This document shows, in pieces, positions 1,766 through 60,507 of a DNA stretch of 64,000 bases. The stretch spans positions 124,001-188,000 of the IMG/VR virus record IMGVR_UViG_3300042455_001086. The stretch is one strand, 5' to 3'. The notes below the pieces were generated by a model. It was not told the DNA's origin, did not search any database, and saw only the letters and a list, made by a program, of their open reading frames with translations. The position numbers and the translations under genes were made by a program. The stretch's first letter is position 1. Every line of letters begins with the position of its first letter.

Positions 1766-2074
1766 TTAAATATTATAGGTTAATTCACCATTTTCAATTT
1801 CAACCTCTAACACACCATCACTTTCATAGGTAATTTTATCTATTTGTTCACCAGTTAATGTAATTTTTTCTGGTTCCATAAAAATTTTATATGCCTGGTT
1901 TAAAGACAACTTTGGGTCTGTAATTAAATTCAAAGTTGTTTGATTACTACATTCAACTATGGAAGGATATTGTCCGCCAACAGTCATAATCGCCTTATCC
2001 CCAATTTGAATTTCATCCAATGAGACCAAAAAAGGTTTTTCATCAATTATAAATAATTTTAATTTTTTTGTCAT
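1766..2074 (-). CDS. hypothetical protein
   Basis: 102-aa ORF. Confidence 0.75.
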   Translation of the reverse strand: MTKKLKLFIIDEKPFLVSLDEIQIGDKAIMTVGGQYPSIVECSNQTTLNLITDPKLSLNQAYKIFMEPEKITLTGEQIDKITYESDGVLEVEIENGELTYNI

Positions 2075-2460
2075 TTTTTTATGTTAAAATTTAATAGAGT
2101 TTCAACCTCTTGATTTTTTAACTCAACAATAGGTCCCCACTCTCCTTTATATGTTATGCCTCTTACCGGTCTATTATCAACCCAAACATACTCACAATCA
2201 TCCTCAATACATCTTGGTTTATCCATAATCAAATCGTGAAATTTGAAACCGTTTTCTATTAACCAATTGTATGTTGTTTCTCTATCTTTTGATTCTCTTG
2301 CGGTGAAAAACACAATTTTATTTCCATCGTTATAAAGTTTATTAATAATCTCAATTGATTTTGGAAAAACTTTTGCTGTTGAGTAAAGGTGTGAATCCTC
2401 ATTTTTTATATCATCACAAATAGTGCCGTCAATATCAAGAAGAAAAACTCTTTTTTTCAT
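2071..2460 (-). CDS. HAD-superfamily phosphatase
   Basis: LDIDGTI motif I, FTAR motif II, MDKP, VDN. Confidence 0.85.
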   Translation of the reverse strand: MKKRVFLLDIDGTICDDIKNEDSHLYSTAKVFPKSIEIINKLYNDGNKIVFFTARESKDRETTYNWLIENGFKFHDLIMDKPRCIEDDCEYVWVDNRPVRGITYKGEWGPIVELKNQEVETLLNFNIKK

Positions 2461-2771
2461 ATTCTCAAATCATTTTTACGATTCATATCCAAAATATAAG
2501 CCATTAAATTTTTAACTAAAGTGTCTGGGTCAATGCTCTGATATAAATCCGGATAACGGTCTTGTAGAATTTTGTTTTCTTCATATTCTCTACAACTATC
2601 AAGTATATCTGAAAGCATTGATTTTAACATATGTTCTTTATCATAAGTATCTTCAACTTTACTTTCCATTACTTGCCCTTCAAGTTCTTGGGTATATTCA
2701 ATTAATTCCTCAACTGGACTTAAATCCATTAAGTGTTCATTCCCTTTGAATATTTGACTTATACTTTTCAT
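2457..2771 (-). CDS. hypothetical protein
   Basis: 104-aa ORF. Confidence 0.7.
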   Translation of the reverse strand: MKSISQIFKGNEHLMDLSPVEELIEYTQELEGQVMESKVEDTYDKEHMLKSMLSDILDSCREYEENKILQDRYPDLYQSIDPDTLVKNLMAYILDMNRKNDLRI

Positions 2772-3316
2772 TCCAAAAACTTCAATATCTTTTCTTTAAC
2801 GCCCGATTGTTTAATTCCTTCAGTATGTGGTCTAGCACAATGAACGAAATTATCAAGACCCCACTCTTTCCAGGATGTCCCATCTTTACCCATATTAAGG
2901 TCATCAACGACAACCCAATGTGTTACTTCAGGATGATCGTGTAACCAGTTCATTATTTCAACAGCTCGTGTGTGCTCTAGTTCCCACATTGCCATCCATT
3001 CGTGATCGTTTATAAAATTTTCACAATCTTTAATTGATGGTGTTAAATCAATTGGCGCTTTAATTCCACGAGTTTTATACATTTCTTTCATATCATCTAA
3101 TGTTCCGTACTTCTTCCAATCAGAAGATATGACTATTTCACACCCTGTAAGTTCTATGATTTCATTTAATACTTTAACTGCCTTTTCATCAAAACTATCC
3201 ATTCGTATATCCATAGGAGTTTCGGGATTTGAATCAAATCCTTTTTTCTTATATCGCCCACCCCAATTATTGGATAGGCATATAACTCCGTCGTGATCTA
3301 AAAATAATATTTTCAT
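2768..3316 (-). CDS. HAD domain protein, 'Swiss army knife' RNA-repair type
   Basis: LFLDHDGV, VISSDW, RAVEI, VVVDD; start trimmed to MKILFLD just after a TATATTTG promoter box. Confidence 0.8.
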   Translation of the reverse strand: MKILFLDHDGVICLSNNWGGRYKKKGFDSNPETPMDIRMDSFDEKAVKVLNEIIELTGCEIVISSDWKKYGTLDDMKEMYKTRGIKAPIDLTPSIKDCENFINDHEWMAMWELEHTRAVEIMNWLHDHPEVTHWVVVDDLNMGKDGTSWKEWGLDNFVHCARPHTEGIKQSGVKEKILKFLE

Positions 3317-3339: not shown

Positions 3340-3645
3340 TCAATAACCGGTAATAATATCAAGCTTTGTTTTATATTTTTGTGAAAACCATTCTTCCACA
3401 AAGTTATATGTTTCGTTATAATCAATATTAAACATATTTAATATTGGATCTATCACATATTTGGAACTAACAAAGACAACACTATCTATACTTCTATCTT
3501 CACAACTATCTAAAATGAAAATTTTATCACCAAAATTTTTCTGACTAAATGTTTTATATCTCCCATTCTTTTCTTCCGCAACAATTAAATTACCATAATG
3601 TAGATTCAAGAATTTAGATACTGCATTTTTTTGTAATTCGGTCAT
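3340..3645 (-). CDS. hypothetical protein
   Basis: ORF trimmed to MTELQKN (the longer start lies inside a terminator). Confidence 0.65.
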   Translation of the reverse strand: MTELQKNAVSKFLNLHYGNLIVAEEKNGRYKTFSQKNFGDKIFILDSCEDRSIDSVVFVSSKYVIDPILNMFNIDYNETYNFVEEWFSQKYKTKLDIITGY

Positions 3646-3655
3646 TTTTAAAATT

Positions 3656-3692
3656 TTAAAAAACCCCAAACTCAATGAAGAGAGTGGGGTTT
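3656..3692 (-). terminator. intrinsic terminator
   Basis: AAACCCCA...TGGGGTTT stem followed by a T run on the minus strand. Confidence 0.8.
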
Positions 3693-3693
3693 A

Positions 3694-3852
3694 TGAGTTG
3701 AGTTATGTCTATCTGAGGTTAGAAGAGGTTTAAGATTTGAAATACTAACTGTTGAACTATTTAACTTTTGACATTTAAGGCCTTGGTAATCTAATCATAG
3801 CATCGTAGATCTGGAACAAAGTTCTCGTAATAGATATAACATAATCAACTCA
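3694..3852 (-). ncRNA. candidate structured RNA downstream of DIP1984-like gene
   Basis: 3832-3852 and 3694-3714 are imperfect ~21-nt inverted repeats closing the element; seven 7-8-nt internal repeats; no ORF; terminator follows. Confidence 0.6.
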
Positions 3853-3854
3853 AA

Positions 3855-4301
3855 TTACAAACCAGCAATTGTGGTTGTAAAGTTGTGTTGGTCCAACTCT
3901 TCTTGAAGTTGTTCAATTTTCAACTCAAGTGATTTAACTTCATTGTCTCTCTCAACAATTGAAATTTCAGCGTTTTTGATAATTGGTGATTCACTTCTAC
4001 GAGCGTAGAAATCAACTGCCACACCATTGGTACAGTCAAGTTCTTTTAAACCTTTTACTAAAGATTTTAACTCACCCATTAGGAAAATTTTATCATAGAC
4101 TGGTCCATTTGCTCTATGGATTTGAGTTTTGATAATGTTGATTTGTTCAATCTTTTTATAGATTGCAGCTAATGTTTCTTTAGAAGAATATGATCTTTCA
4201 TTTCCTTCTAATACAGAGTTATTAATGTGTAATCTTTTTGTTAATTCATTTAATTCTTGAACTAACTTGTTTTTAAACTTTAATGCTTGTTTAATCGTCA
4301 T
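3855..4301 (-). CDS. DIP1984/DUF6847-like coiled-coil protein
   Basis: MTIKQALKFKNKL..., IKTQIHRAN, C-terminal IEQLQEELDQHNFTTTI match the family pattern as I recall it. Confidence 0.65.
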   Translation of the reverse strand: MTIKQALKFKNKLVQELNELTKRLHINNSVLEGNERSYSSKETLAAIYKKIEQINIIKTQIHRANGPVYDKIFLMGELKSLVKGLKELDCTNGVAVDFYARRSESPIIKNAEISIVERDNEVKSLELKIEQLQEELDQHNFTTTIAGL

Positions 4302-4318
4302 AACTTATTTTTTTGTTT

Positions 4319-4326
4319 CAAAATTA
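4319..4326 (-). promoter_or_regulatory. Bacteroidota-type -7 promoter box (TAATTTTG)
   Basis: TAnnTTTG 17 nt upstream of the ATG at 4301. Confidence 0.55.
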
Positions 4327-4340
4327 TACTTGTATTATAT

Positions 4341-4670
4341 TTAATAGTCAATATTTTTTGTTAGACAAATTTCTCTATCGGCTAAATGACTATATGCCCA
4401 CACCTCAAAACCAAAACCGCCGGTTGGTCTAAATATATATTCAATTTCACCATACATATCAAAAACACCTTTTATGTTTTCTTTCCATTTATTTAAGATT
4501 TCTACCTCATCCGGATGAATTGTAAATGTCATTGATTTATTATTTTCATCAACCAAATCATTTTTATGTTTTATTGAATCACAAAACAATAAATCTGTGT
4601 TATTACTATTTTCACTTTTATTAAGAATCCTTTCACGCATTTTGTTTAATCTTTCAACTTCAGTTTCCAT
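4341..4670 (-). CDS. hypothetical protein
   Basis: 109-aa ORF. Confidence 0.7.
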   Translation of the reverse strand: METEVERLNKMRERILNKSENSNNTDLLFCDSIKHKNDLVDENNKSMTFTIHPDEVEILNKWKENIKGVFDMYGEIEYIFRPTGGFGFEVWAYSHLADREICLTKNIDY

Positions 4671-4679
4671 GTGAAAATT

Positions 4680-5237
4680 TTAATCATTATTTTTTATAAC
4701 TTCAACAACCTTTAAAGACCAGGGATCAGAAAAATCATCAAACTCACAGATTGATATTTCATTATGAAGTGCGTTGAAATATAAATCTCCCTTTAATATT
4801 GGTTCCTTTAAATTTTTAAGGTATAATTTTCCATCTACTTCAATATATAGTTTTTCATCCCGATGTTCCTCGCATAAGGTATAAATCCAACCATTTATTT
4901 TATGTTGTTCTCCTGGTTCTCCACAAACTTCACATACCTGGAAACTCTCTCTTTCCGCCTCAACGATAAAGTGTAATCCATTTTCTGGAAGATTGTCAAT
5001 AAAAAAACTAAGCCCTCCAAATTTTTCTTTTACATTGATAAAACTTTTATCCCAACCAAGTCTAATCAAAGTTTCAAAAAGTCTCTCAAGTATTCCAAGC
5101 CAACCATTTCCAACATTGAATTCATTTCTTGATAATATTGGTCCTTTGTCTGTTCTATAAACTCTTACAAGTCCACCAATATTTGCTAAGAAATCTTCAA
5201 ACTCAGTATCAGTTCTAAAATTATCATTCTTTCTCAT
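4680..5237 (-). CDS. conserved phage protein with Zn-binding motif
   Basis: VKEKFGGLSF followed by CEVCG...LCEEH. Confidence 0.75.
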   Translation of the reverse strand: MRKNDNFRTDTEFEDFLANIGGLVRVYRTDKGPILSRNEFNVGNGWLGILERLFETLIRLGWDKSFINVKEKFGGLSFFIDNLPENGLHFIVEAERESFQVCEVCGEPGEQHKINGWIYTLCEEHRDEKLYIEVDGKLYLKNLKEPILKGDLYFNALHNEISICEFDDFSDPWSLKVVEVIKNND

Positions 5238-5646
5238 CTTTTCTTATTTTTTTAACAATAGTCAATGCGTTTGATAAAGTCCAATATGAATCCCAAAAAC
5301 CACCTCGGTCATCAAGAAAAATGTTTGCATATAGTTTTCCGTTTATACCATAAGGTCTGTTCCATTCTGGGTGCATTTCATTTACTCCGTGGACTTCAAC
5401 ACCCAAAGATTCAACCTGTTCTTTTGCGTTCTCTAATCTATCTAAACTTCTTGCTGTATTAATCAAAAAGTATATTCCTTCTTTTTGACATTCCAAGATT
5501 AGATCAACCATTTTTTTACAATTTTCTCTAATCTCTTCATTATATGGAATAATTGTGTCGTCAAGATCACAAGCGATTATAATCTTACCATTCTTCAACC
5601 ATTCTTTGACTAATCTATTTGTATAAAAGTTTGTATGATGTCTCAT
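5224..5646 (-). CDS. HAD-superfamily hydrolase
   Basis: CDLDDTI, NTAR, KLYANIFLDDR. Confidence 0.8.
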   Translation of the reverse strand: MRHHTNFYTNRLVKEWLKNGKIIIACDLDDTIIPYNEEIRENCKKMVDLILECQKEGIYFLINTARSLDRLENAKEQVESLGVEVHGVNEMHPEWNRPYGINGKLYANIFLDDRGGFWDSYWTLSNALTIVKKIRKDEKE

Positions 5647-6210: not shown

Positions 6211-7248
6211 CTATTTTCCAAACCCAACACTACCAGAACCTTTAATTGTTGGTGTTTTTTTCAACCCTTCAAGATTTTCAATTGTTTCTTCAAAAGTTCT
6301 ACCCATAACAATAACCGAAATAACAACTTCTTTTAAGTGTGACAATGACATCCCTTCAGTTTTTTTGATCCATTCCTCAATATCAATACCTTTTAAATCT
6401 TCTTCACTTAATTTATGTTCAATATAAGCTCTTCTAATATCTTCATTTGGAAGTTCCACTTTATATCTTCTATCAAAACGGGACGGACGGTTGGTGATTC
6501 TTTCCTGTAACTTCTCCGGATAGTTTGTTGTTGCAATATAAACAACACCTTCAATTTGTTTAACACCATCTAGTATGTTTAATAATCTAGCAGTTTGACT
6601 TCTACCTTCACCAGCAAGTGAATCAATATCCTCCAATAAAACAATCAATGGTCTTTTTGGTTCAACTTTTCTAAATGTCCCAATAAATGATGTAAACCTT
6701 TCAACATCTTCTTCATCTTTGATATTAATTACAATACCATCTTTTTCAATTAGTTGTTGTGATATTAATTGGATTATACCTGATTTACCACAACCTGGTT
6801 CACCATACATTAATATACCTCTTTTATGGATATAGTTATATTTCTTATAGTTGTCGGCTCTGTTCCAAAAATTATCAATATCTTTTAAAATGTCTGTAAT
6901 TTCATATGAAGGTAAGTGATATAACTCGTCAGACTTGAATGGTTGTTTTTTAACGGTATAAGTTTGTAAATTACCATTCCAACCTATTTCATAAACACCG
7001 GCAGGAACCTTTGGTACTGTAACATATGCCGGTGCGTACTCGTTATTTTTTAAATTACTCCAACAACAAGGTATATCTAAATCTTTTTTTTCTTCATCAG
7101 ATGTTCCACTAATAATAGGTTCTTCTATTGCCGGATCATCATTATATGCTAATGTATCTTCTATATATTTTTCACTCATATTATTTCTTTTTAATATTTC
7201 TTTTAGTTCTTTTCTCCAATCTCTTTCCATTGTTCTATTTTTTCCCAA
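6211..7248 (-). CDS. AAA+ ATPase
   Basis: Walker A GEPGCGKS, Walker B LLEDID, SRH ATTNYPE..NRPSRFDRR. Confidence 0.9.
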   Translation of the reverse strand: MGKNRTMERDWRKELKEILKRNNMSEKYIEDTLAYNDDPAIEEPIISGTSDEEKKDLDIPCCWSNLKNNEYAPAYVTVPKVPAGVYEIGWNGNLQTYTVKKQPFKSDELYHLPSYEITDILKDIDNFWNRADNYKKYNYIHKRGILMYGEPGCGKSGIIQLISQQLIEKDGIVINIKDEEDVERFTSFIGTFRKVEPKRPLIVLLEDIDSLAGEGRSQTARLLNILDGVKQIEGVVYIATTNYPEKLQERITNRPSRFDRRYKVELPNEDIRRAYIEHKLSEEDLKGIDIEEWIKKTEGMSLSHLKEVVISVIVMGRTFEETIENLEGLKKTPTIKGSGSVGFGK

Positions 7249-9244: not shown

Positions 9245-9276
9245 AAAAAAAGGTGACTCCATCAATGGGAGTCACC
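9245..9276 (-). terminator. intrinsic terminator after RNA ligase
   Basis: GGTGACTCC/GGAGTCACC stem plus T7 on the minus strand. Confidence 0.8.
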
Positions 9277-10377
9277 AACATTATTTTTTTCACCAAAAAT
9301 TAAATAATCCGGATTTATACATTTTGACACTTTTTTACGATCACCGGTTACACATTTAACAACTATACCTTCGTGTGGAACTTTGGTTCCGTCTATAAAA
9401 TTATTAAACACAAAACTATCTTGTTTTTCTTTATTCCAATATCCCCAGTGTAATCTTTCAACTTGTGGTAAGTTTAACACATCAAAGTGTGCACACTCAG
9501 CTGGGTACCCAACATATTCATTATCAACCTCAACATCAAATCCGGCAAATTTTATTTCACTTAAACCGTAGTCATAGTTTTTTTGTATACCAGCGCCATA
9601 TATCTCACCGTATATTATAAAACCACTTTCAAGGTATTCATAAGTATCTTTAACGTGAGACCAAAGTTTTGATCTTATATCATATTTAACAGCAACCTCA
9701 TCCCAAACATCGGTAGAATAAAAACCTTGTGAGTCGGACCCTTTCTCAACATTATGAGATCCGTATACATATTCAAACGCCGCCCATTTATTTCCGAAGA
9801 ATATTTTAACACGGTCAAGTAATGAAAGTTTTTTCTTTTTAACTATTCCATATCTGGCATTGGTTCCGTGAAGTTTACGAGTTATAACAACTTCATCTTC
9901 TTCGTTAAACATATCCGGAACATTCTTCTGATTAGGAAACTTGTAGTATATGTGGAAATTAGGATTTTGATGGTATTTTATTTTTCTACCTCCAGATTGT
10001 AAAGTTATGGTTTTAACTGGTGGTTCGTATTTGAATATCTCAAGTAGTTCCATACAATCTGCCCCTTCGTATCTATATTTATCCGGAACAAAACCTATTG
10101 GTATTATTAAACATTCAGAGTAAACTCCACGAAGTTTTACGGTTCTTACTCTTTGTCCTTTTCTTAAATAATTTGTAACACCCAATCCATCAGAAAGTTT
10201 CTTTGGTATTACAGCGTCAGTAGTAGAAACAACAACCATATCGCCAACCTGGTATTCACCTTTTTTGGTTATTGCTTGCCAACCATTAACTAATACTAAT
10301 TCTATATTGTCAGCACCTGGTATTTCAGATACTGAACCTATCTTACCAACATATGTAACACTATTTAAATTTTCCAT
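9262..10377 (-). CDS. RNA ligase, DRB0094 family
   Basis: N-terminal OB-like IPGADNIE...KLRGVYS; motif I TRKLHGTN; GEIYG; EGIVVK. Confidence 0.9.
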   Translation of the reverse strand: MENLNSVTYVGKIGSVSEIPGADNIELVLVNGWQAITKKGEYQVGDMVVVSTTDAVIPKKLSDGLGVTNYLRKGQRVRTVKLRGVYSECLIIPIGFVPDKYRYEGADCMELLEIFKYEPPVKTITLQSGGRKIKYHQNPNFHIYYKFPNQKNVPDMFNEEDEVVITRKLHGTNARYGIVKKKKLSLLDRVKIFFGNKWAAFEYVYGSHNVEKGSDSQGFYSTDVWDEVAVKYDIRSKLWSHVKDTYEYLESGFIIYGEIYGAGIQKNYDYGLSEIKFAGFDVEVDNEYVGYPAECAHFDVLNLPQVERLHWGYWNKEKQDSFVFNNFIDGTKVPHEGIVVKCVTGDRKKVSKCINPDYLIFGEKNNVGDSH

Positions 10378-11695: not shown

Positions 11696-12109
11696 TTACA
11701 AAGATAAATGTTTTTTTGCATTTTCCAAAAATGATTCAATATTTTTTTTACCAACAGGATTTGCTGAGTGGATCAAATATTCCGGTAATGGTTGGTTCTC
11801 GTCCGCACAATATTCAACAAGAAATTTTGCACAGTCAAGACCAGTTTTTTCTTTGATGTTGTCGTAATCCAAAGTTCCTTTGGTTGCAACATTTCTAAAA
11901 TATTCATCCATTGCAGTATCACCAAGGTCGTGATCAAATGATACAAACTCAGGAGCACCATTTACTTCTAGGTATTGTACGAACTCGTCATAGTTTCTTA
12001 CAACATCCCAATCATTCTCCCAATAAAACTTATTATGTTTATCCGGAACCAATCCAATTGCGTCCTTTGGTGACCGCACGTCATCCAAGAATAATTTGTT
12101 ATTTTTCAT
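11696..12109 (-). CDS. cyclic-phosphate-processing receiver domain protein
   Basis: LFLDDVR, SFDHDLG, TGLDCAKFL, IHSANPVG. Confidence 0.85.
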   Translation of the reverse strand: MKNNKLFLDDVRSPKDAIGLVPDKHNKFYWENDWDVVRNYDEFVQYLEVNGAPEFVSFDHDLGDTAMDEYFRNVATKGTLDYDNIKEKTGLDCAKFLVEYCADENQPLPEYLIHSANPVGKKNIESFLENAKKHLSL

Positions 12110-12626
12110 ATAATCCGTCTTTTTCATCGTCTTTCATCATTTGAATCAATCTAGCTTCTCTCGAATACTTTCGTATAAGTTTGAATATTTCTGTAATATC
12201 TGTAAATTCAGACACTGGACTATCATTTCTACCAGGAAGAAATATCAAAGTAAATCCGTGGTTTGCTTCAAACTTTTCGGTAACTCTAATTCCACAGATC
12301 TCATCAATATAAACCCAAGGAAAGTTTCCCGATAGTTTTACATCAATACCAATTTTTTTCAATCTTTCAACAAAGATAGTAATTTTTTTACTAGTTAAAC
12401 TTGTTGGTGTTTCTTTTTCCATATAAGTTCCAAATTTAGTTTCTTTTGTTTTCATACTAGAATTTTTCCATTCTCTCCAATTATCAAAGTCTTTAAGTTT
12501 TTCTAAAAACTCATCATCCATTTTTTTTGCTTGTTGAATAAGTCGTTTTATTTCATTTTCTGTTAAATGTCTTTCGCCATCTAATTGTTCAACCAACCAT
12601 TCTACTGCTGTCTGTTTTACCTCCAT
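12099..12626 (-). CDS. hypothetical protein (apparent fusion of short modules)
   Basis: KQTAVEWL N-terminal module plus a second module from MKTKETKFG. Confidence 0.65.
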   Translation of the reverse strand: MEVKQTAVEWLVEQLDGERHLTENEIKRLIQQAKKMDDEFLEKLKDFDNWREWKNSSMKTKETKFGTYMEKETPTSLTSKKITIFVERLKKIGIDVKLSGNFPWVYIDEICGIRVTEKFEANHGFTLIFLPGRNDSPVSEFTDITEIFKLIRKYSREARLIQMMKDDEKDGLYEK

Positions 12627-14629: not shown

Positions 14630-15283
14630 TTATCCAACAACACCAACTAAATCATCCAGGTGGTGATCTCCAGACATATCGGACCCAACTGGTCTTTTAT
14701 CCATAATTTTGATTATTTCATCAATACTATATGGGTCCAATCCATTTCCATCAACACCAACATCCATTTTTTTACCATTACCGAATTTGGCTTCTCGTCC
14801 AAGGTGTGAGTGTCCGTGTAAATGGATAACACCTTTGTTAAGACCATTCCAACTTTGTAATGGATAATGACATAAAACAAAGTTTCTGTCATTTATTCTA
14901 ACTTCCAAGTAGTGATTTACACTTAAAAATCTTGATTGGATATTTTCTTTGTTATTAACTATATGTTGGTCGTGATTACCAAGTATTAGATGAATGTTTT
15001 TACAAATCAATCTTTCTAAGAAAATACCAATATTCTCAAACCCACCAAATGAAACATCACCTAACATAATCAATGTATCGTCCTGACCCACCATATTGTT
15101 AATTCCATCTACCAATCGTTGGTTCATCTGCTCGATAGTTTGAAAATCTCTTGTTGAATCAACTGGGATTTTTCCATCTTGAGTTCTCCAATTCGTCACA
15201 CCACGACAAATATTTTGGTGTCCGAAATGTGTATCGCTCACTATAAACACTTTTCCTATTGTTTCTAATGTTTTAAATTTCAT
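14630..15283 (-). CDS. calcineurin-like metallophosphoesterase
   Basis: SDTHFGH, LGDV, GNHD, CHYP, HGHSH. Confidence 0.9.
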   Translation of the reverse strand: MKFKTLETIGKVFIVSDTHFGHQNICRGVTNWRTQDGKIPVDSTRDFQTIEQMNQRLVDGINNMVGQDDTLIMLGDVSFGGFENIGIFLERLICKNIHLILGNHDQHIVNNKENIQSRFLSVNHYLEVRINDRNFVLCHYPLQSWNGLNKGVIHLHGHSHLGREAKFGNGKKMDVGVDGNGLDPYSIDEIIKIMDKRPVGSDMSGDHHLDDLVGVVG

Positions 15284-41030: not shown

Positions 41031-43409
41031 CTAGTCCACCAAGAGTTTTGAAATATTATTTTGTTTTGTAATTTTAACTACACTATCTGCCCACTGACTT
41101 ACCATTGGATTGTGTGTAATTACAAACACTTTATCAAAATAATCCTTAATCTTAACAAAAAATTCAGAAACCATTTCTAAGTTGTCATTACTTATTTTAC
41201 CAAATACCTCGTCGAATACTACAAGGTTGGGTTTTGGTAGAGAACATACCTTACTCAAGACAGATCTTAAAGCAAGTGAAGCAATTGTTTTTTCATAACC
41301 AGAACCACTAACCATTAACTTTTCAACACCGGTATTATTATCTACCTGGATGAACTCAACCTCTGACTTATCGTTAATTCTAATCTCTAATTTGAAATAT
41401 GAAGAATCTTCCATCAATCTTTGTAATTCAGAGTTAATAAGTGGCATCATAGTTCTCATAATAATTTTACTAACACCATTTTTACCATAACTTTCCAGAT
41501 ACATTTTATAAATCTTATCCTTACTTTCCTCTTCTTTAATTTTTACAATTAAATTTTTGTTGTTTGTAATCTTTTCCTGGTTAGATTTGATACTATACTC
41601 ATTTGAGTTGATTGTATTGTTCTTTTCTCTTAATAGTTTATCATAACTATCCAATTTCAAATCAGCTTTGATTAACATTGCATCAATCTGATCGTTTGTT
41701 TTAATTTTATCCTGGACTTCATCCCACCTTTTTAATTTATCTTCCAAACCAGATATTTTAAGATCACAGCTTTCAACACTCAAATCATATTTTTCTTTGA
41801 TAAGTTTGTTTTTTTCATATTCATCAAACTGTCTTTTTGTCTCAACAAATTCTTTTTCTTTGTTGGATAATTCCGTCATTAACTTCTCAATAACCTTTTT
41901 TTGTTGTGTAAATCCATCAAGTTCCGAAATTTTTTGTTGTGTTATTGCCGCGTTCATTAACTCAATACCACAATGTTCGCACTTAATGCCACCCTTCACT
42001 GATGATTGTAATTTTTCGATTTCAGAAATTTTGGTTTCAAGTTCAATTTTTGATTGGAATTTATTTTTATAATCCTCTTTTACTTTATCGTGTTCATCTT
42101 CTTTATAATATTGTTCTGGTTCAACAACTTTTAAATTAGATAATAATTCAACATATCCTTCTTTTTCTTTCTTTAAAGTCTCAATTTGAGATTTTGTTGT
42201 TTCCGGATTAAGTAATGCAATTTCTTTATCAATGTCTGTGTGTTTCTTTTTTAACATTGAATCTCTATAATCCTTTCCTTTTGCAATACCTTCTTCAATT
42301 TCTTTTACTTCTTTTTGTAATACATCAATCTGGCTATTTAGTTCAGTAATTTTTTCCTCGAAAGTTTCAATATCTTGTTTTAGTTGTTCTGAACTATAAA
42401 GGTTTGATATTTTTGATTTACTAAATGAAGAATAAATTTCTTTTGCCGCTTCTTCTTTTCTCTTTAAAAATTCAAGACCCATAAACCTTGATAGGACTTG
42501 CCCTCTGGCGGTTGGTTTTGATTCCAATAGTTCTTCCAGGTTTGTTGCTGTTGTAAGAATTGTCATTAAGAAATCTTCCTTGGTTCCGATTGAGTTTTTA
42601 ATGAAAGCTTCAGTTTCTCGTCTTTGCTCACCGGTGAAATTCTGTAATGATCCATCGTGTAGTTTTTTAAAGAAATCAAGCTCGGTCTTAACATTCCATT
42701 CACCTTTCTTTGATTTTTTTCTTTCAATGGTTCTTACAATAATATAATCTTCCCCATCAATTGTAATCTCACCTTTTACAACTACCGAGTTTTTATCGGT
42801 AAATCGATTAAATACTTCTTCAGCCTTTGATGTTTTTGTTGTTTCGTTAAAGAATAGGAACATTAATAAATCCACCGATAATACGGTTTTACCTCCAAAA
42901 TTTGGAGGATCTGATTCAACAACAACTATTCCATTTAACTTATCAAAATCAAGTCGTTGGTTTTCACCATATGATAAAAAGTTGGAGAACTCAATGTTTC
43001 TAATATACCACTTTTTAAATTGTGTTGTATCAACATCATCTTCTTTCATTTTGTTTTCAACCGTTTGGTTTAAATCCAAAACTTCTTTAAGGTGTTCTCC
43101 ATATCCCTTGGATTCCAAGAATTTTTTTAACAAATCAAGTTGGTAATTTGTATCTGTAATATTCATTGACACATCAACCGTTTGCATAGTTTCAGTATCA
43201 ACATTTTTTACTTTTGTAACAACATTAACATTTGTGGTGTTATACTTCTTTTGGAAGTAATGTTTAACACTTTTCATTTTGTCTTGTGTGAAATTTTCTT
43301 GTAGGTCTTCCCACACCACTTGAATAGATGGGTTTTCAAGCTTTGAAAAATCCAAATCTTTTATCATAATATTGTAATTGAATAATTTTGGTGGATTAAA
43401 TAAATCCAT
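41031..43409 (-). CDS. SbcC/Rad50-like ATPase (T4 gp46-like)
   Basis: NFLSYG, NFGGKT, CEHC zinc hook, SGYEK signature, VFDE, ITH. Confidence 0.9.
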   Translation of the reverse strand: MDLFNPPKLFNYNIMIKDLDFSKLENPSIQVVWEDLQENFTQDKMKSVKHYFQKKYNTTNVNVVTKVKNVDTETMQTVDVSMNITDTNYQLDLLKKFLESKGYGEHLKEVLDLNQTVENKMKEDDVDTTQFKKWYIRNIEFSNFLSYGENQRLDFDKLNGIVVVESDPPNFGGKTVLSVDLLMFLFFNETTKTSKAEEVFNRFTDKNSVVVKGEITIDGEDYIIVRTIERKKSKKGEWNVKTELDFFKKLHDGSLQNFTGEQRRETEAFIKNSIGTKEDFLMTILTTATNLEELLESKPTARGQVLSRFMGLEFLKRKEEAAKEIYSSFSKSKISNLYSSEQLKQDIETFEEKITELNSQIDVLQKEVKEIEEGIAKGKDYRDSMLKKKHTDIDKEIALLNPETTKSQIETLKKEKEGYVELLSNLKVVEPEQYYKEDEHDKVKEDYKNKFQSKIELETKISEIEKLQSSVKGGIKCEHCGIELMNAAITQQKISELDGFTQQKKVIEKLMTELSNKEKEFVETKRQFDEYEKNKLIKEKYDLSVESCDLKISGLEDKLKRWDEVQDKIKTNDQIDAMLIKADLKLDSYDKLLREKNNTINSNEYSIKSNQEKITNNKNLIVKIKEEESKDKIYKMYLESYGKNGVSKIIMRTMMPLINSELQRLMEDSSYFKLEIRINDKSEVEFIQVDNNTGVEKLMVSGSGYEKTIASLALRSVLSKVCSLPKPNLVVFDEVFGKISNDNLEMVSEFFVKIKDYFDKVFVITHNPMVSQWADSVVKITKQNNISKLLVD

Positions 43410-57465: not shown

Positions 57466-60400
57466 TTAATTACCACCTGATAGAATATTATTTAAGTCAT
57501 TTGCAAATTCTTGAGGTGTAAAATCAATTGCATCAGGACCACAAATATCAGTAGTTACAGATTTATTTAAAATAGCACTCCAACCATAATTCCATAAACC
57601 TACATTTTGTGAAACATAAACATTTGCTATAGGATATGTTATAGAATTAAAACTAGCATCAAAGTTTGTACCTAAAGCTGAAGATAATTCAGCTGAAGAT
57701 ATATTTGAACTATTTGTTGTAGCAGCATACGCGTGAAGTAAAAAGTTTTTAGCACTACTAGCTAAATCATTTGCTGGATAAATTACTCCTTTAAAATAAT
57801 CCCAATGAGTATTATAATCACTTACAAAATTTGCATGATCATAAGTCCATCCACCATAAGGAAAAGGATATGCTGTTGGTTGTAGTACATCATTTGTTAA
57901 TGAAGGAGGTAAATCTGATCCGTGATACCTACTGTCACTTTCATTAACAAATGCAATAAATAAAATTGAAGTTGGTGCAACCCAACTTGGTGTATTCCAA
58001 TTTGGAGGAATTACTGCTCCTATGGTTGTACCATCGGCAGGATTTAACCATGTTATAGTATTAGCATAAGAAGGTTTTGTACCTAATTTAATACTTCTAG
58101 GAAGCCCTAAATAATCTTCTGGTTGAAGATATTCAAATAAATATAAATTACCAGTATAATTTGGATTTGCTAATTGATAATTACTAAACCATTGTGAAAT
58201 ACTTTGAGCTAATACGAGTTTATTCCGAGTAGCACAATTAAAGGCATAGGGTCCTGATGTTATATCTATATAAGCATATACATCAGTTGTATTTGGTAAT
58301 GGTGGAATTGGTGTAGGAGTTGGTGTAGGAGTTGGTGTAGGAGTTGGTGTAGGAGTTGGTATTGGTCCACAATAAAGACAAGAAATGTCATATTCTATCA
58401 CCAAATTAACAATTACTTTTGCGTCAGATAGTAAATTTACATTACTTGGGTTACAATCTGTACCACTAATACAATTCGTAAATATTTGTATTGTGTTTTT
58501 AGTTTCATCAATAATAACTTCACCTATCCCTTCAAAACCTTCCAATGTGTCAACAAGAATTGTGATCCAGTCTTGATCTGAAGGATAATCATTTAAACCG
58601 TTTGATGTGTAAAAAGGAACTGTTTCCAAGTCGCCATCAACAGTTACTTCTAATATAAATTGAGCATCATTTAATATACAATCTGTATAATCAAAAGTTA
58701 AATCATAATAACCTTCATTATACATTTGAAATATTCCTCTTTTCCCTGATATACCGAGACTTTGGAAGTTTGAATCACAAATATTAAAAACTTGATATGA
58801 TGACACCAAACTTGTTCCTTGTAATGTTGTTGATTTGGAATACGAACAACCTTTACTATCGGTAACTTGTAAGGTATAAACACCTGGTGATAAACCGGTA
58901 ACTAAAAGCCCAGTTTGAGAACCCACATTTGGGCTCCAAGAATATGTAAATGTTGGTTCACCATTATATATTAAAACTTCAATTTCACCATTATTACCAG
59001 TTGTTGGTTGTGTTACTAAAAAATCAAAAAACACACCACTTGATGGTGATATATTAAATGTTTTTGTTTGTGAACAACCATTATTATCTGTTACTGTTGC
59101 GGTATATGTTCCGGATGCTAGGTTGTTGAATTGTGTTTGTGATGATGGTGGTTGACCAGTAATTTGATATGTGTATGGTAATGCACCACCAGGACTTGCT
59201 GTAATCTTTACAGAACCATTATTAAGACCACAAGTTGTTCCGGTTGTGGCTGCCGATATTGTAAATAAAATAATATTTGTTATTGTAATCGTCTTTGTAT
59301 ATGTACAAGTCCCATCTGTAATTGTTAAGGTATATGTCCCCGATGCTAAATTATTAAATGAAAAATTAACAAGTGTTGTTGTTTGTGAATTCGTATTACC
59401 AAGAGAATCTGTCAGTGTGTATATAAAAGTTCCTCCAGCAACACCATTATTTAAAACAATATTAACACTACCATTATTACCACAACTTGAATTTACAGTA
59501 TTTACTGATGTTACAAAAAATGAGTTTGGTGTTGATAATGTGGTTGAGTTTGTAATACTACAAAGACCGGCATCTTGAACGAAAACTGAAAAATTTCCTG
59601 GGTTTAAATTTGTGAAAGTATATGTTTGCGAATAAGTAACGATTGTCTGACCGTTGCTACCACTAAAATAATATGGTGCTGTACCATCAACAACCGTAAC
59701 ACTAACTTCACCGTTATTTGTAAAACAACTTGGTGGTGTTGTAATAAAAGAACCAAATTTAATTGGTGGAACATTATTAACTGTTACTGTTTTAATTAAC
59801 TCACACCCTTTTGAATCGGTTACTGTAACCGAATATACACCAGGTAATAAGTTTTCTACCGATGATGAAGTTTCACCATTAGACCACAAATATGTAAATG
59901 GTGCGTTTCCAGTTAAACCAGTTATGAATATTTTTCCATTACCAGCCGCAGAAACACAATTGGCATCATTTACAACATAAAACCCATAATTTATCGGTGT
60001 TGATGAATATATAATACAAGATTCCGATCTTCCAGAACAACCACCACCATCATTTGCAACAACATAATAGGTGTCGGCCGATAGTCCGTTAAATATGTAA
60101 TTATTTGGAACCCCAGTTGCCGAATCATATAAATTATTTGATATATTATATAAATAAAAATCGGCTGAGCCATATATACTCTGTGTTGTTGCTGTAATTG
60201 ATCCGTTATTTGCACCACAAAAAGTTCCTTCAACATTTAGTGAAACACAAGTTCCAGATGATATATATACCGGAACTATTTCACTATCAAAAGCCGAATC
60301 TGTAATTTCAACAAAATAACTACCAGCCGGTAAATTATTAACCCGATATACACTTGTTGTTGCTGATGTTGGTAATAACCCACTTGTTGAGATTTCGCTA

Positions 60401-60507
60401 ACCGCCCAACCCGGACTATCACCAGTAATATTAAAAAATACTTGCCCAAGACCGGAATTAGTACAATCCCCAGTTATAGAATAATTATTTATTGTTATTA
60501 CACCCAT
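57466..60507 (-). CDS. SprB-repeat tail fibre/adhesin-like protein
   Basis: about seven SprB-type repeats (PFTYLWSNG..LLPGVYSVTVTDSKGC), PT linker, distinct C-terminal domain. Confidence 0.85.
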   Translation of the reverse strand: MGVITINNYSITGDCTNSGLGQVFFNITGDSPGWAVSEISTSGLLPTSATTSVYRVNNLPAGSYFVEITDSAFDSEIVPVYISSGTCVSLNVEGTFCGANNGSITATTQSIYGSADFYLYNISNNLYDSATGVPNNYIFNGLSADTYYVVANDGGGCSGRSESCIIYSSTPINYGFYVVNDANCVSAAGNGKIFITGLTGNAPFTYLWSNGETSSSVENLLPGVYSVTVTDSKGCELIKTVTVNNVPPIKFGSFITTPPSCFTNNGEVSVTVVDGTAPYYFSGSNGQTIVTYSQTYTFTNLNPGNFSVFVQDAGLCSITNSTTLSTPNSFFVTSVNTVNSSCGNNGSVNIVLNNGVAGGTFIYTLTDSLGNTNSQTTTLVNFSFNNLASGTYTLTITDGTCTYTKTITITNIILFTISAATTGTTCGLNNGSVKITASPGGALPYTYQITGQPPSSQTQFNNLASGTYTATVTDNNGCSQTKTFNISPSSGVFFDFLVTQPTTGNNGEIEVLIYNGEPTFTYSWSPNVGSQTGLLVTGLSPGVYTLQVTDSKGCSYSKSTTLQGTSLVSSYQVFNICDSNFQSLGISGKRGIFQMYNEGYYDLTFDYTDCILNDAQFILEVTVDGDLETVPFYTSNGLNDYPSDQDWITILVDTLEGFEGIGEVIIDETKNTIQIFTNCISGTDCNPSNVNLLSDAKVIVNLVIEYDISCLYCGPIPTPTPTPTPTPTPTPTPIPPLPNTTDVYAYIDITSGPYAFNCATRNKLVLAQSISQWFSNYQLANPNYTGNLYLFEYLQPEDYLGLPRSIKLGTKPSYANTITWLNPADGTTIGAVIPPNWNTPSWVAPTSILFIAFVNESDSRYHGSDLPPSLTNDVLQPTAYPFPYGGWTYDHANFVSDYNTHWDYFKGVIYPANDLASSAKNFLLHAYAATTNSSNISSAELSSALGTNFDASFNSITYPIANVYVSQNVGLWNYGWSAILNKSVTTDICGPDAIDFTPQEFANDLNNILSGGN
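58308..58360. repeat. perfect 12-bp tandem repeat encoding a (PT)n linker
   Basis: (TTGGTGTAGGAG)x4. Confidence 0.85.

What the first reader, a model, noticed from the sequence alone, without database searches (positions are those of the whole stretch)
3656..4326. Self-contained unit: DIP1984/DUF6847-like protein plus a stem-closed RNA with seven short repeats
Seen (minus strand): a TAnnTTTG promoter box, then a 148-aa coiled-coil gene, then ~160 nt with no ORF, then a strong terminator. The RNA ends pair with each other (TGAGTTGATTATGTTATATCT at 3852-3832 with AGATAGACATAACTCAACTCA at 3714-3694). The loop holds a periodic array: TTAAATG TCAAAAG TTAAATAG TTCAACAG TTAGTAT TTCAAATC TTAAACC. Known: the protein pattern matches a family of unknown function. 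Inference: this is a ribonucleoprotein system in which an oligomer of the protein binds one repeat per subunit (TRAP/Hfq-like logic). It could act as protein plus RNA antitoxin/scaffold, or as an infection-linked sensor. I know of no described system with this layout.
Basis: partly seen in the sequence, partly recalled or inferred. Interest (0 to 1): 0.85.

Follow-up and report, generated by a model that had tools for sequence, protein, structure and literature searches.

The report
Conserved protein–RNA pair in RNA-repair clusters
A small helical protein of unknown function is followed, in a giant phage and in hundreds of related phages and bacteria, by an undescribed ~160-base structured RNA with a 7-base repeat array, and the pair sits among RNA-repair genes, so it is probably a new protein–RNA partner of RNA repair.

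Summary
On the minus strand lie a promoter-like site, a 148-aa gene (4301..3855), a 161-nt ORF-free RNA (3853..3693) and a terminator hairpin (3691..3658).

The RNA has a 20-bp closing stem and a loop with seven TYAA units spaced 7-9 nt apart.

It is not chance. All 195 homologous genes with at least 150 nt of downstream sequence, taken from viral and metagenome contigs, carry the same element on the gene strand. Flanking genes vary. The stem's sequence differs between clades but still pairs: 89% of cells pair, against 60% shuffled and 33-45% slid, and 27 of 28 pairs show double changes. The repeat region has no consensus structure.

The protein has the DIP1984 fold (PDB 3KDQ, TM 0.75). Rfam 15 has no match for the RNA, and I found no paper describing it.

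The new point is context. In the window the pair lies between an RNA ligase/cRec and a 'Swiss-army-knife' HAD phosphatase. In Verrucomicrobia it lies in tRNA arrays, directly before RtcB and sometimes just after Ro60.

Best reading: a ribonucleoprotein of RNA repair, laid out like rsr–Y RNA–rtcB but built from unrelated parts. Protein–RNA binding and one subunit per repeat are untested. The toxin-antitoxin and sensor ideas have no support.

The parts
4319..4351 (-). Promoter-like site: TTGACT (4351..4346), 17 nt, TATAAT (4328..4323), overlapping TAATTTTG (4326..4319, the Bacteroidota-type TAnnTTTG)
   Evidence: 11 of 12 matches, the best in the region; sequence. Consensus match only, and poorly conserved in close relatives.
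3855..4301 (-). Gene for a 148-aa helical protein of the DIP1984/DUF6847 fold. The N-terminal 88 residues are net basic and the C-terminal part net acidic.
   Evidence: full-length but sub-threshold HMM matches; AF2 pLDDT 90; Foldseek top hit 3KDQ, TM 0.75; charge dipole in 148 of 148 relatives; 79 close relatives; 1732 clusters at 50% identity.
3693..3853 (-). The non-coding RNA, 161 nt. It starts 1-2 nt after the stop codon and ends 1-2 nt before the terminator hairpin.
   Evidence: covariance model R1, 182.8 bits, the only copy in the window; conserved downstream of homologs, gene strand only; no Rfam family.
3832..3852 (-). 5' arm of the closing stem (P1)
   Evidence: In L003/L004 a 5-nt insertion here is matched by a 5-nt insertion in the 3' arm.
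3694..3714 (-). 3' arm of the closing stem (P1)
   Evidence: Cognate arms average -21.0 kcal/mol, arms from unrelated clades -11.6, antisense arms -16.8.
3791..3813 (-). Small internal hairpin (P2: CAGAUC ... GAUUAG) whose loop and 3' side carry the conserved GAUnnnnUGAUnnnGAU block (3804..3788)
   Evidence: helices 5 and 6, about 80% of cells paired, some double changes; conserved GAU block. Less secure than P1.
3725..3778 (-). Array of seven 7-9-nt units (TYAAnnn) ending in UUAAACCUC. The region is predicted to be single-stranded.
   Evidence: 7-8-nt spacing across the family; RNAalifold finds no consensus pairing in the core; CA every 7 nt in GC-rich relatives.
3658..3691 (-). Intrinsic-terminator-like hairpin and U run
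   Evidence: fold; a GC-rich hairpin plus T run in this position in most AT-rich relatives. In nine GC-rich relatives a tRNA-Phe gene starts 3-8 nt after the RNA instead.
2768..3316 (-). Context gene: standalone HAD phosphatase of the 'Swiss-army-knife' RNA-repair family (PF18143), two genes downstream
   Evidence: E 8.5e-24. The same family lies within about 2.5 kb in 18 of 151 distinct loci from several clades.
9262..10377 (-). Context gene: RNA ligase (PF09414 plus the PHA02142 OB domain), 5 kb upstream on the same strand
   Evidence: Homologs lie near the module in three other clades.
11696..12127 (-). Context gene: cRec-type receiver domain (PF20274), which has been proposed to be a 2',3'-cyclic phosphoesterase linked to RNA ligases
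   Evidence: Pfam hit on the called gene; coordinates converted from L385; PMC7824862, section 3.4.9.
6211..7230 (-). Context gene: AAA+ ATPase (PF00004, DUF815-like). It recurs next to the module in other clades.
5224..5646 (-). Context gene: HAD-like hydrolase (weak Hydrolase_3 match)
2071..2460 (-). Context gene: HAD-type acid-phosphatase/LNS2-like protein (weak match)
   Evidence: The same weak family also lies near the module in L383.

Best explanation
The unit is a two-part module: a DIP1984-fold protein and a stable small RNA encoded directly after it. The RNA's two ends pair into a long rod. The rod encloses a small hairpin with a GAU-rich block and an unstructured, A/C-rich strand made of 7 to 10 units of about 7 nt (YCAA/NCAnnnn).

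The module belongs to the RNA-repair or tRNA-maintenance gene set of its carrier. It most likely works as a ribonucleoprotein in that pathway.

Shown:
- The RNA exists as a conserved, strand-specific, covarying element.
- It is tied to this gene.
- The pair recurs next to RNA ligases and end-healing phosphatases.

Inferred:
- The basic N-terminal half of the protein binds the RNA.
- Several protomers line up on the repeat array, one per unit.
- The rod protects the RNA ends and fixes the length of the platform.
- The particle acts as a platform or decoy during repair of cleaved tRNA or rRNA, in the way Ro60–Y RNA is thought to act beside RtcB.

In AT-rich phages the RNA's 3' end is set by a terminator. 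In Verrucomicrobia it is probably set by RNase P cutting at the tRNA-Phe gene that follows.
For: 1. Linkage.
- 195 of 195 homologous genes with at least 150 nt of downstream sequence have the element: 184 by nhmmer and 11 by eye.
- An RNA-pattern scan of IMG/VR that ignored the protein gave 41 true hits, 40 with the gene just upstream and one (L102) in a locus too short to show it. The other 12 hits lie inside unrelated ORFs and lack the array.
- A sequence profile finds the core in 121 of 151 distinct loci on the gene strand and in none on the other strand.
- Flanking genes fall into many unrelated families.
- Some relatives have a 62-aa ORF inserted between gene and RNA.

2. RNA structure.
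- 89.1% of cells pair, against 60.5% shuffled and 33-45% slid. 27 of 28 pairs carry double changes. The covariation score is 0.488 against about 0.055.
- Cognate arms average -21.0 kcal/mol, non-cognate arms -11.6. The sense strand beats the antisense in 49 of 56. 128 of the pairs are G·U.

3. Periodic single strand.

4. Context.
- Window: cRec, RNA ligase, AAA+, HAD, then gene plus RNA, then SAK-HAD, then another HAD. L387 has the same block apart from cRec.
- Other phages: SmpB and the CCA-adding enzyme family nearby.
- Verrucomicrobia: tRNA array, [Ro60/TROVE, RlaP], gene, RNA, [tRNA-Phe], RtcB. RtcB lies near the module in 12 of about 16 loci.
- These gene families are the published RNA-repair set of jumbo phages (PMC7824862).

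5. Protein: the basic N-terminal and acidic C-terminal parts are conserved in 148 of 148 relatives.
Against: - There is no experimental or transcript evidence at all.
- Binding of this protein to this RNA is inferred only from co-occurrence.
- The protein is near neutral overall (median pI 6.5) and has no known RNA-binding domain.
- Its only structural relative, 3KDQ, has no known function.
- The alignment used for pair counts was fitted to the model's structure, which favours pairing.
- The RNA-repair link is guilt by association. Many loci have only unknown neighbours within the short flanks I held: 46 of 151 show a repair-type enzyme.
- In the two loci with Ro60, the RNA could be Ro60's partner instead.
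- About six distant cellular homologs (L227, L236, L238, L242, L252, L256) show no clear array.
- I could not read Burroughs & Aravind 2016, so the prior-art check is incomplete.
Confidence: 0.55

Rival explanations
1. The RNA acts on something other than the adjacent protein. It could be a Y-RNA-like partner of Ro60 or of another RNA-processing factor. It could also be a sponge or decoy whose repeated single-stranded 7-nt units soak up a host RNA-binding protein or a tRNA-cleaving nuclease. In that case the DIP1984-fold protein would be only a co-regulated helper.
For: In two Verrucomicrobial contigs the module lies just after a TROVE (Ro60) gene. Y RNAs are encoded next to rsr and have a long terminal stem plus a large loop (PMC4201824). 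A decoy role against an anticodon nuclease has been suggested for YrlA (PMC7790460). The repeat unit has the length of a tRNA loop.
Against: TROVE is absent from the window and from all other loci held, yet the RNA is always present with the DIP1984-fold gene. The RNA has no tRNA-like T or D arms, matches no Rfam Y RNA or tRNA model, and is longer than Y RNAs. The strict pairing with one gene across 30-100% protein identity is better explained by a direct partnership.
Confidence: 0.2
2. The element is a cis-acting 3' untranslated region of the gene's own mRNA. It would be a stabilising 3' structure, or an operator through which the protein controls its own mRNA, rather than a separate RNA.
For: The RNA starts 0-8 nt after the stop codon in most AT-rich loci and is followed by the only terminator of the unit. 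No separate promoter for the RNA was found.
Against: In some phages a 62-aa ORF sits between gene and RNA. In several GC-rich loci the spacer between ORF and RNA, which is 21-71 nt long, contains its own hairpin. In nine loci a tRNA gene follows within 3-8 nt, as expected for a processed stable RNA. A stabiliser would not need about 115 nt of conserved sequence with a 7-nt period.
Confidence: 0.12
3. It is a DNA-level element: iterons of an origin, a partition site or an operator bound by the adjacent protein, flanked by an inverted repeat.
For: Short direct repeats next to a small coiled-coil protein gene resemble centromere or iteron arrangements.
Against: The arms pair better on the gene strand than on the complement in 49 of 56 cases, owing to G·U pairs. 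The profile matches the gene strand only. A terminator or a tRNA gene bounds it. A 7-nt period does not fit the helical repeat of duplex DNA. The same element lies inside chromosomal tRNA arrays.
Confidence: 0.03
4. It is a toxin-antitoxin pair or an abortive-infection sensor, with the protein toxic and the RNA neutralising it.
For: Protein-plus-RNA pairs exist among type III systems. In Arcicella the module lies beside a type I restriction system on what looks like a mobile element.
Against: There is no PADLOC match. The fold is a helical bundle, not a nuclease. The repeats are 7-8 nt and lie downstream, not 34-36 nt upstream behind a terminator. The module is a conserved chromosomal gene in Verrucomicrobial RNA-repair operons and in lytic-type giant phages.
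Confidence: 0.05

Closest known systems
Ro60 (Rsr)–Y RNA ribonucleoprotein of the rsr–yrlBA–rtcBA RNA-repair operon (PMC7790460, PMC4201824)
   Same: The gene order is the same: an RNA-binding-protein gene, then a small RNA whose 5' and 3' ends form a long stem around a large loop, then an RNA ligase gene. In Verrucomicrobia this reads gene, RNA, (tRNA-Phe), RtcB, and twice Ro60 itself lies just upstream. Both are tied to tRNA biology and both also occur in phages.
   Different: The protein is a 145-aa helical DIP1984 fold, not a TROVE ring. The RNA is 145-224 nt, not 80-130 nt. Its loop is a 7-nt repeat array rather than a tRNA-like domain. It matches no Rfam Y RNA or tRNA model. Most carriers, the window included, show no Ro60 in the sequence held.
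DIP1984 family / Pfam DUF6847 (PDB 3KDQ, Corynebacterium diphtheriae; often auto-annotated 'septicolysin')
   Same: The whole length aligns to both family profiles. The predicted fold superposes on 3KDQ with TM 0.72-0.75. Close relatives carry PF20935.
   Different: Scores are below both curated cut-offs (20.2 against 27 bits; 26.1 against 70 bits). The family has no known function. The 'septicolysin' label refers to a thiol-activated cytolysin and looks like an annotation carry-over; I saw nothing that supports it. No RNA partner has been reported for the family in the papers searched.
ROOL and GOLLD RNAs of phages and prophages (bioRxiv 10.1101/2024.12.08.627333)
   Same: They are phage-borne structured RNAs of unknown function that often lie near tRNA islands, as this RNA does in the GC-rich clade.
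   Different: Those RNAs are 500-800+ nt, highly structured, form RNA-only cages and have no dedicated protein gene. This RNA is about 160-220 nt, is largely single-stranded inside one rod, and is always paired with one protein gene. There is no Rfam match.
Proteins that read evenly spaced short RNA motifs (TRAP with GAG/UAG every 5 nt; HutP with UAG every 7 nt) and T4 gp32 on its own mRNA operator (own knowledge, not tested here)
   Same: A short motif repeated at a fixed spacing in an unstructured strand next to a structured anchor is the signature of multi-subunit or cooperative binding.
   Different: Those proteins have different folds. Those RNAs are 5' leaders that control expression of downstream genes. 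Here the array lies in a separate RNA after the gene, and binding has not been shown.
Type III toxin-antitoxin systems (ToxIN type; own knowledge)
   Same: A protein gene is paired with a repeat-bearing RNA.
   Different: There the repeats are about 34-36 nt, lie upstream of the toxin behind a terminator and are cut by the toxin, which is an endoribonuclease. None of this is seen here.

Membership tests
DIP1984 family / DUF6847 (protein) | Match to the family HMM above the curated cut-off | tested here: not met
   Pfam PF20935: 20.2 bits against 27, E 6e-4. NCBIfam NF038048: 26.1 bits against 70, E 7.7e-6. Both matches cover nearly the whole profile.
DIP1984 family / DUF6847 (protein) | Same fold as the solved family member 3KDQ | tested here: met
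   AF2 model pLDDT 90. The Foldseek top hits are 3KDQ chains C and A, probability 1.00, TM 0.72-0.75. The next hit has probability 0.25.
DIP1984 family / DUF6847 (protein) | Close relatives are assigned to the family | tested here: met
   Many of the 79 homologs at 45-93% identity carry a precomputed PF20935 hit. The Atlas neighbours are DUF6847 clusters.
Ro60–Y RNA ribonucleoprotein | A TROVE-domain (Ro60/Rsr) protein | tested here: not met
   The module's protein has no TROVE match. tblastn with a Verrucomicrobial TROVE protein finds nothing in the window. Only 64 kb of the 257-kb contig was searched.
Ro60–Y RNA ribonucleoprotein | RNA of 80-130 nt with a long stem formed by its two ends and a large internal loop (PMC4201824) | tested here: inconclusive
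   The stem-plus-loop plan is met. The size is not: 161 nt here, 145-224 nt in relatives.
Ro60–Y RNA ribonucleoprotein | tRNA-like T and D arms (YrlA class) or a match to a Y RNA model | tested here: not met
   ARAGORN finds nothing. The Rfam scan at E up to 10 gives no Y RNA or tRNA-like hit on 3600..3900, and none appears in 19 relatives.
Ro60–Y RNA ribonucleoprotein | Encoded beside rsr and rtcB | tested here: inconclusive
   Met in Verrucomicrobial relatives: RtcB in 12 loci and TROVE in 2. Not met in the window, where the ligase is an ATP-dependent RNA ligase 5 kb away.
Ro60–Y RNA ribonucleoprotein | The RNA binds Ro60 | not testable with these tools
   This needs immunoprecipitation or a binding assay.
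Type III toxin-antitoxin (ToxIN-like) | Tandem repeats of about 34-36 nt upstream of an endoribonuclease toxin gene | tested here: not met
   The units are 7-9 nt and lie downstream. There is no PADLOC match. The fold is a helical bundle.
Known RNA families (Rfam 15) | Match at the family's gathering score | tested here: not met
   No match in the window. In 18 diverse relatives only tRNAs matched. Only chance-level hits appear at E up to 10.
Intrinsic terminator | GC-rich hairpin followed by a U run | tested here: met
   Fold of 3691..3658. A hairpin and T run are kept in most AT-rich relatives, with changed stem sequences. Termination itself was not tested.
Jumbo-phage RNA-repair gene set (PMC7824862, section 3.4.9) | Operon-level linkage to an RNA ligase (Rnl or RtcB) and end-healing phosphoesterases (cRec, SAK-HAD, calcineurin-like) | tested here: met
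   Window: cRec, RNA ligase and SAK-HAD on the same strand within 8 kb. Relatives. Enrichment against a genome-wide background was not computed.

The most novel reading that the evidence does not exclude
The module is a previously unrecognised ribonucleoprotein class of RNA repair. A rod-closed RNA displays 7-10 evenly spaced 7-nt single-stranded units, the size of a tRNA loop. One DIP1984-fold protomer binds each unit, building a defined-length particle. That particle either presents or shields broken tRNA for RtcB or Rnl ligases, or acts as a multivalent decoy for tRNA-cleaving defence nucleases. If so, the whole DIP1984/DUF6847 family (more than 1700 clusters, the 3KDQ fold) gets its first function, and Ro60–Y RNA gains an unrelated analogue that giant phages carry.
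Probability: 0.3. Interest if true: 0.9.

Novelty: new variant of a known kind. Interest (0 to 1): 0.82.

Why it matters
- It defines a widespread structured RNA that Rfam 15 lacks and that I did not find in the papers searched. It occurs in giant phages of freshwater Bacteroidota-type hosts and in Verrucomicrobial chromosomes.
- It gives a large family of unknown function (DIP1984/DUF6847, with a solved but unexplained structure) a testable partner and a pathway.
- RNA repair in phage-host conflict is known mostly through its enzymes. The only known ribonucleoprotein in it is Ro60–Y RNA, whose role is still unclear. A second, unrelated protein–RNA pair in the same operon position suggests that such particles are a general requirement of the pathway, and it offers a simpler system to study.
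- The strict 7-nt array is a rare, clean case for studying how a protein oligomer could measure an RNA.
- One cultured carrier exists, Arcicella aurantiaca DSM 22214, so experiments are feasible.

Tried and rejected
- GenBank phages by DNA gave no match. By protein there was one uncultured 462-kb phage, LR756500.1, which also has the RNA. No cultured phage is therefore available.
- PLSDB plasmids by protein gave no match. I could not test whether the Acinetobacter plasmid 'septicolysin' genes have an RNA.
- PHROGs and PADLOC gave nothing for the protein.
- Sequence search of the PDB gave only a marginal 3KDQ hit, E 0.7.
- RNAalifold on MAFFT alignments spanning several clades found no stem, or only the outermost helix, because the arms are misaligned. 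A covariance model from one clade solved this.
- Per-sequence duplex z-scores against shuffles were weak (median -1.6) in this AT-rich sequence. I replaced them with the cognate versus non-cognate arm test.
- A 14-base pattern for the GC-rich variant returned only chance hits in IMG/VR.
- A column-pair search in the core gave only artefacts of conserved columns.
- I considered and dropped tmRNA, tRNA-like RNA, 6S RNA, a retron RNA (no reverse transcriptase seen among the neighbours checked), a CRISPR-repeat mimic, a small ORF in the loop (MSKVK is not conserved) and stop-codon read-through of the gene (the frame closes after 19 codons).
- Burroughs & Aravind 2016 could not be opened.
Full report
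**What is in the window.** The window is part of a 257-kb viral contig, IMGVR_UViG_3300042455_001086. It has about 30% G+C, small genes packed on one strand, a virion structural protein and an SbcC-like nuclease, so it is a giant phage.

- A promoter-like TTGACT-17-TATAAT (4351..4323) overlaps TAATTTTG.
- A 148-aa ORF runs 4301..3855.
- The following stretch has no ORF.
- The arms 3852..3832 and 3714..3694 pair in the minimum-energy fold (z = -3.9).
- A GC-rich hairpin and U run lie at 3691..3658.
- Seven TYAA-type units, 7-9 nt apart, lie at 3778..3727.

Taken alone, the promoter match and the repeat count are weak. The region has as many promoter-like matches as its shuffles, and 4 of 200 shuffles reach six TYAA. 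The case rests on comparison with relatives.

**The protein.** It aligns end to end with Pfam DUF6847 and NCBIfam DIP1984 but scores below both cut-offs. An AlphaFold2 model built on 27 relatives is confident (pLDDT 90) and mostly helical with a small beta hairpin. Its only real structural match is 3KDQ, the DIP1984 protein of Corynebacterium diphtheriae, at TM 0.72-0.75. That protein has no known function.

The family is large. I found 79 homologs at 45-93% identity and 1732 clusters at 50% identity with E up to 0.001.

In all 148 distinct relatives examined, the first 88 residues are net positive (median +7) and the rest net negative (median -7). PHROGs and PADLOC have nothing for it.

**The RNA is conserved and tied to this gene.** In the three closest contigs the ORF-free stretch is at least as well conserved as the coding sequence. 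Two of them carry a 5-nt insertion in the 5' arm that is matched by a 5-nt insertion in the 3' arm.

In 79 viral loci whose proteins are 47-100% identical, most leave a 210-260-nt gap after the gene before the next same-strand ORF. The exceptions mostly have no same-strand ORF called downstream, or carry a 62-aa ORF inserted after the gene. The gaps align into one design:
- a rod formed by the two ends;
- a conserved YUACAA;
- a GAUnnnnUGAUnnUGAU block;
- four UCAAnnn units, a spacer, then GUCAAAnnUUAAAACUC.

Counting all loci from viral and metagenome contigs, 184 of 203 genes have a profile hit downstream on the same strand. Eight of the rest are cut off by the end of the contig, and the other eleven show the element by eye. 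That makes 195 of 195.

I also ran a scan of IMG/VR with a pattern taken from the RNA alone. It returned 53 stretches. Forty have the gene immediately upstream, and one is a locus too short to show it. Twelve lie inside unrelated ORFs and lack the array, so they are chance hits.

A profile search of 151 distinct downstream regions finds the core in 121 on the gene strand and in none on the other strand.

The genes on either side belong to many unrelated families. Some phages have a 62-aa zinc-ribbon ORF inserted between gene and RNA. The constant unit is therefore gene plus RNA.

**Structure.** The arm sequences differ completely between clades, yet each 5' arm pairs with its own 3' arm.
- The mean duplex energy is -21.0 kcal/mol for cognate arms and -11.6 for arms from unrelated clades.
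- In 42 of 56 cases the cognate arm beats every unrelated one.
- The gene-strand arms are more stable than their complements in 49 of 56, owing to 128 G·U pairs. This argues for RNA rather than duplex DNA.

A covariance model built from the window's clade finds one copy in the window. It also finds 48 of 100 diverse loci, all on the gene strand. On that alignment:
- 89.1% of cells pair, against 60.5% in shuffles and 33-45% with slid partners;
- 27 of 28 pairs show changes on both sides;
- the covariation score is 0.488, against about 0.055.

The alignment is fitted to the model, which favours pairing, but the margin is large. A short internal hairpin around the GAU block is less secure, at about 80% paired.

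The 115-nt core has no consensus structure. Several clades share a 4x4 internal loop, GGAU opposite UGAA, in the rod. The window's clade does not.

**The repeat array.** Across 56 AT-rich RNAs, successive T[CT]AA lie 7 nt apart in 124 cases and 8 nt apart in 46. In 43 cases they are 14-16 nt apart, which means one degenerate unit lies between. The mean is 5.5 units per RNA, against 2.4 in shuffles.

Distant GC-rich relatives keep the same plan in a different base composition. CA recurs every 7 nt for 8-10 units, for example GUCAAAC CGCAUCG GUCAGCC ... CUCAAGC CGCAGCC CGCAAGG CUCAAGC. There, 47% of CA spacings are exactly 7, against 6% shuffled.

**Is it known?** Rfam 15 gives nothing at gathering scores in the window or in 18 diverse relatives, where only tRNAs match. 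At E up to 10 there are only chance-level hits. ARAGORN finds nothing.

The paper library has no occurrence of DUF6847 or DIP1984 among the 20 papers it listed. The 'septicolysin' label attached to family members refers to a thiol-activated cytolysin. It looks like an annotation carry-over, and nothing I saw supports it. The published inventory of jumbo-phage RNA-repair components does not list this protein or an RNA partner. I could not open Burroughs & Aravind 2016.

**Context, the main new finding.** In the window the module sits in a same-strand run of genes:
- cRec receiver-type domain (12127..11696);
- RNA ligase (10377..9262);
- AAA+ ATPase (7230..6211);
- HAD-like hydrolase (5646..5224);
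- two unknown genes;
- the module;
- one unknown gene;
- 'Swiss-army-knife' HAD phosphatase (3316..2768);
- another HAD-like phosphatase (2460..2071).

RNA ligase, cRec and SAK-HAD are the enzymes that Iyer et al. describe as the RNA-repair set of jumbo phages (PMC7824862, section 3.4.9).

The same block, apart from cRec, recurs in a lineage with 66% protein identity. SAK-HAD lies within about 2.5 kb in 18 of 151 distinct loci from several clades. A calcineurin-like phosphoesterase lies nearby in 17, and homologs of the window's RNA ligase in three other clades. Two other giant-phage contigs have SmpB 3-6 kb away, and one also has a CCA-adding-type nucleotidyltransferase.

The GC-rich relatives lie in Verrucomicrobial contigs of up to 620 kb that carry housekeeping genes. 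There the module is embedded in tRNA gene arrays on the same strand. In nine loci tRNA-Phe(GAA) starts 3-8 nt after the RNA's 3' arm. RtcB follows directly and lies near the module in 12 of about 16 loci. In two contigs a TROVE (Ro60) gene lies just upstream, once with SIR2 and the RNA-ligase-associated RlaP.

In the isolate Arcicella aurantiaca DSM 22214 the module, with its RNA, lies beside a type I restriction system and mobile-element-like genes.

**Interpretation.** Two unrelated ligase systems, Rnl with end-healing phosphatases in phages and RtcB in bacteria, have the same protein-plus-RNA pair beside them. The order protein gene, small RNA with terminal stem, RtcB mirrors rsr–yrlBA–rtcBA (PMC7790460; PMC4201824).

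I therefore read the module as a ribonucleoprotein of RNA repair that works like Ro60–Y RNA without being a member of it. The membership tests fail on the protein domain, the RNA size, the tRNA-like arms and the Rfam models.

The flanking tRNA gene in one clade and the terminator in the other both fit a discrete stable RNA rather than a mere 3' UTR.

That the basic half of the protein binds the array, one protomer per unit, is an inference from co-occurrence, periodicity and charge. It is untested.

**Rivals.**
- The RNA serves another factor (Ro60, a nuclease or a host protein) as a partner or decoy: 0.2.
- It is a cis-acting 3' UTR element: 0.12.
- It is a toxin-antitoxin pair or a sensor: 0.05.
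- It is a DNA repeat element: 0.03.

**Limits.**
- There are no transcript data.
- No cultured phage carries the module.
- Flanks were short for most loci, and enrichment of repair genes was not tested against a background.
- About six distant cellular homologs show no clear array.
- Bona fide actinobacterial DIP1984 loci were not examined.

**Verdict.** The added result is that the unit belongs to RNA-repair gene clusters. This is a new variant of a known kind (a Ro/Y-like ribonucleoprotein beside RNA ligases), built from an undescribed RNA family and a protein family that until now had no function.

Noticed in passing
L030, L035, L039, L042-L044, L046 (about 1-190 nt after the homolog's stop codon): A 62-aa ORF with two CxxC pairs (zinc-ribbon-like) is inserted between the DIP1984-fold gene and the RNA in one phage clade. 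The RNA then starts right after this ORF.
   Followed up: partly
Rod of the RNA in L022-L025, L040, L054, L064-L081, L084 and others; not present in the window's copy: A conserved symmetric internal loop, 5'-GGAU-3' opposite 5'-UGAA-3' (GGAA/GAAG in GC-rich relatives), sits between the outer and middle helices of the rod in several clades whose helices otherwise differ. It may be a tandem G·A motif that serves as a protein or tertiary contact.
   Followed up: partly
L241, L243, L246, L250, L253, L254, L255, L258, L259: In Verrucomicrobia-type loci, tRNA-Phe(GAA) begins 3-8 nt after the RNA's 3' arm, inside arrays of up to 16 tRNA genes. This suggests co-transcription and RNase P processing.
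   Followed up: partly
L388 6440-7867 and the P0309 contig: A TROVE (Ro60) gene lies immediately upstream of the module in two Verrucomicrobial contigs, but Rfam finds no Y RNA there. The module's RNA might be the Ro60 partner in these species.
   Followed up: partly
L261 (Arcicella aurantiaca DSM 22214, NZ_QGGO01000004.1, 139-159 kb): A cultured isolate carries the module beside a type I restriction-modification system (HsdR, HsdS, HsdM, PBECR3) and HTH_17, AAA_25 and DUF4248 genes, which looks like an integrated mobile element. It is a possible experimental system.
   Followed up: partly
L256 4001-4414 (Bacteroidales MAG contig): The homolog has an in-frame TAG after codon 109, and the reading frame continues into a normal family C-terminus. 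This is either TAG recoding, as in some gut phages, or a pseudogene. No clear RNA array follows it.
   Followed up: no
L381 4734-5942: An IS605 OrfB/TnpB (Cas12f-like) gene sits 4 kb from the module in a 292-kb phage contig, next to NUDIX and SmpB genes.
   Followed up: no
L079 438-2297 and 8 other loci (L017, L054, L080, L147, L161, L162, L167, L214): A full-length Hsp70/DnaK gene (E 1e-256) lies just upstream of the module in one group of phage loci. Band_7/SPFH genes recur near it in another group.
   Followed up: no
window 41031..43409 (-), 57466..60507 (-), 14630..15283 (-): Other annotatable genes in the window are an SbcC-like nuclease subunit, a large virion structural protein and a weak calcineurin-like phosphoesterase. 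Most other large ORFs match no PHROG or Pfam family.
   Followed up: no
L385 16628-17896 (same contig, just outside the window's low end): A UvrC-like protein (GIY-YIG, UvrC_M and UvrC RNaseH-like domains) is encoded about 6 kb downstream of the module in the phage contig.
   Followed up: no
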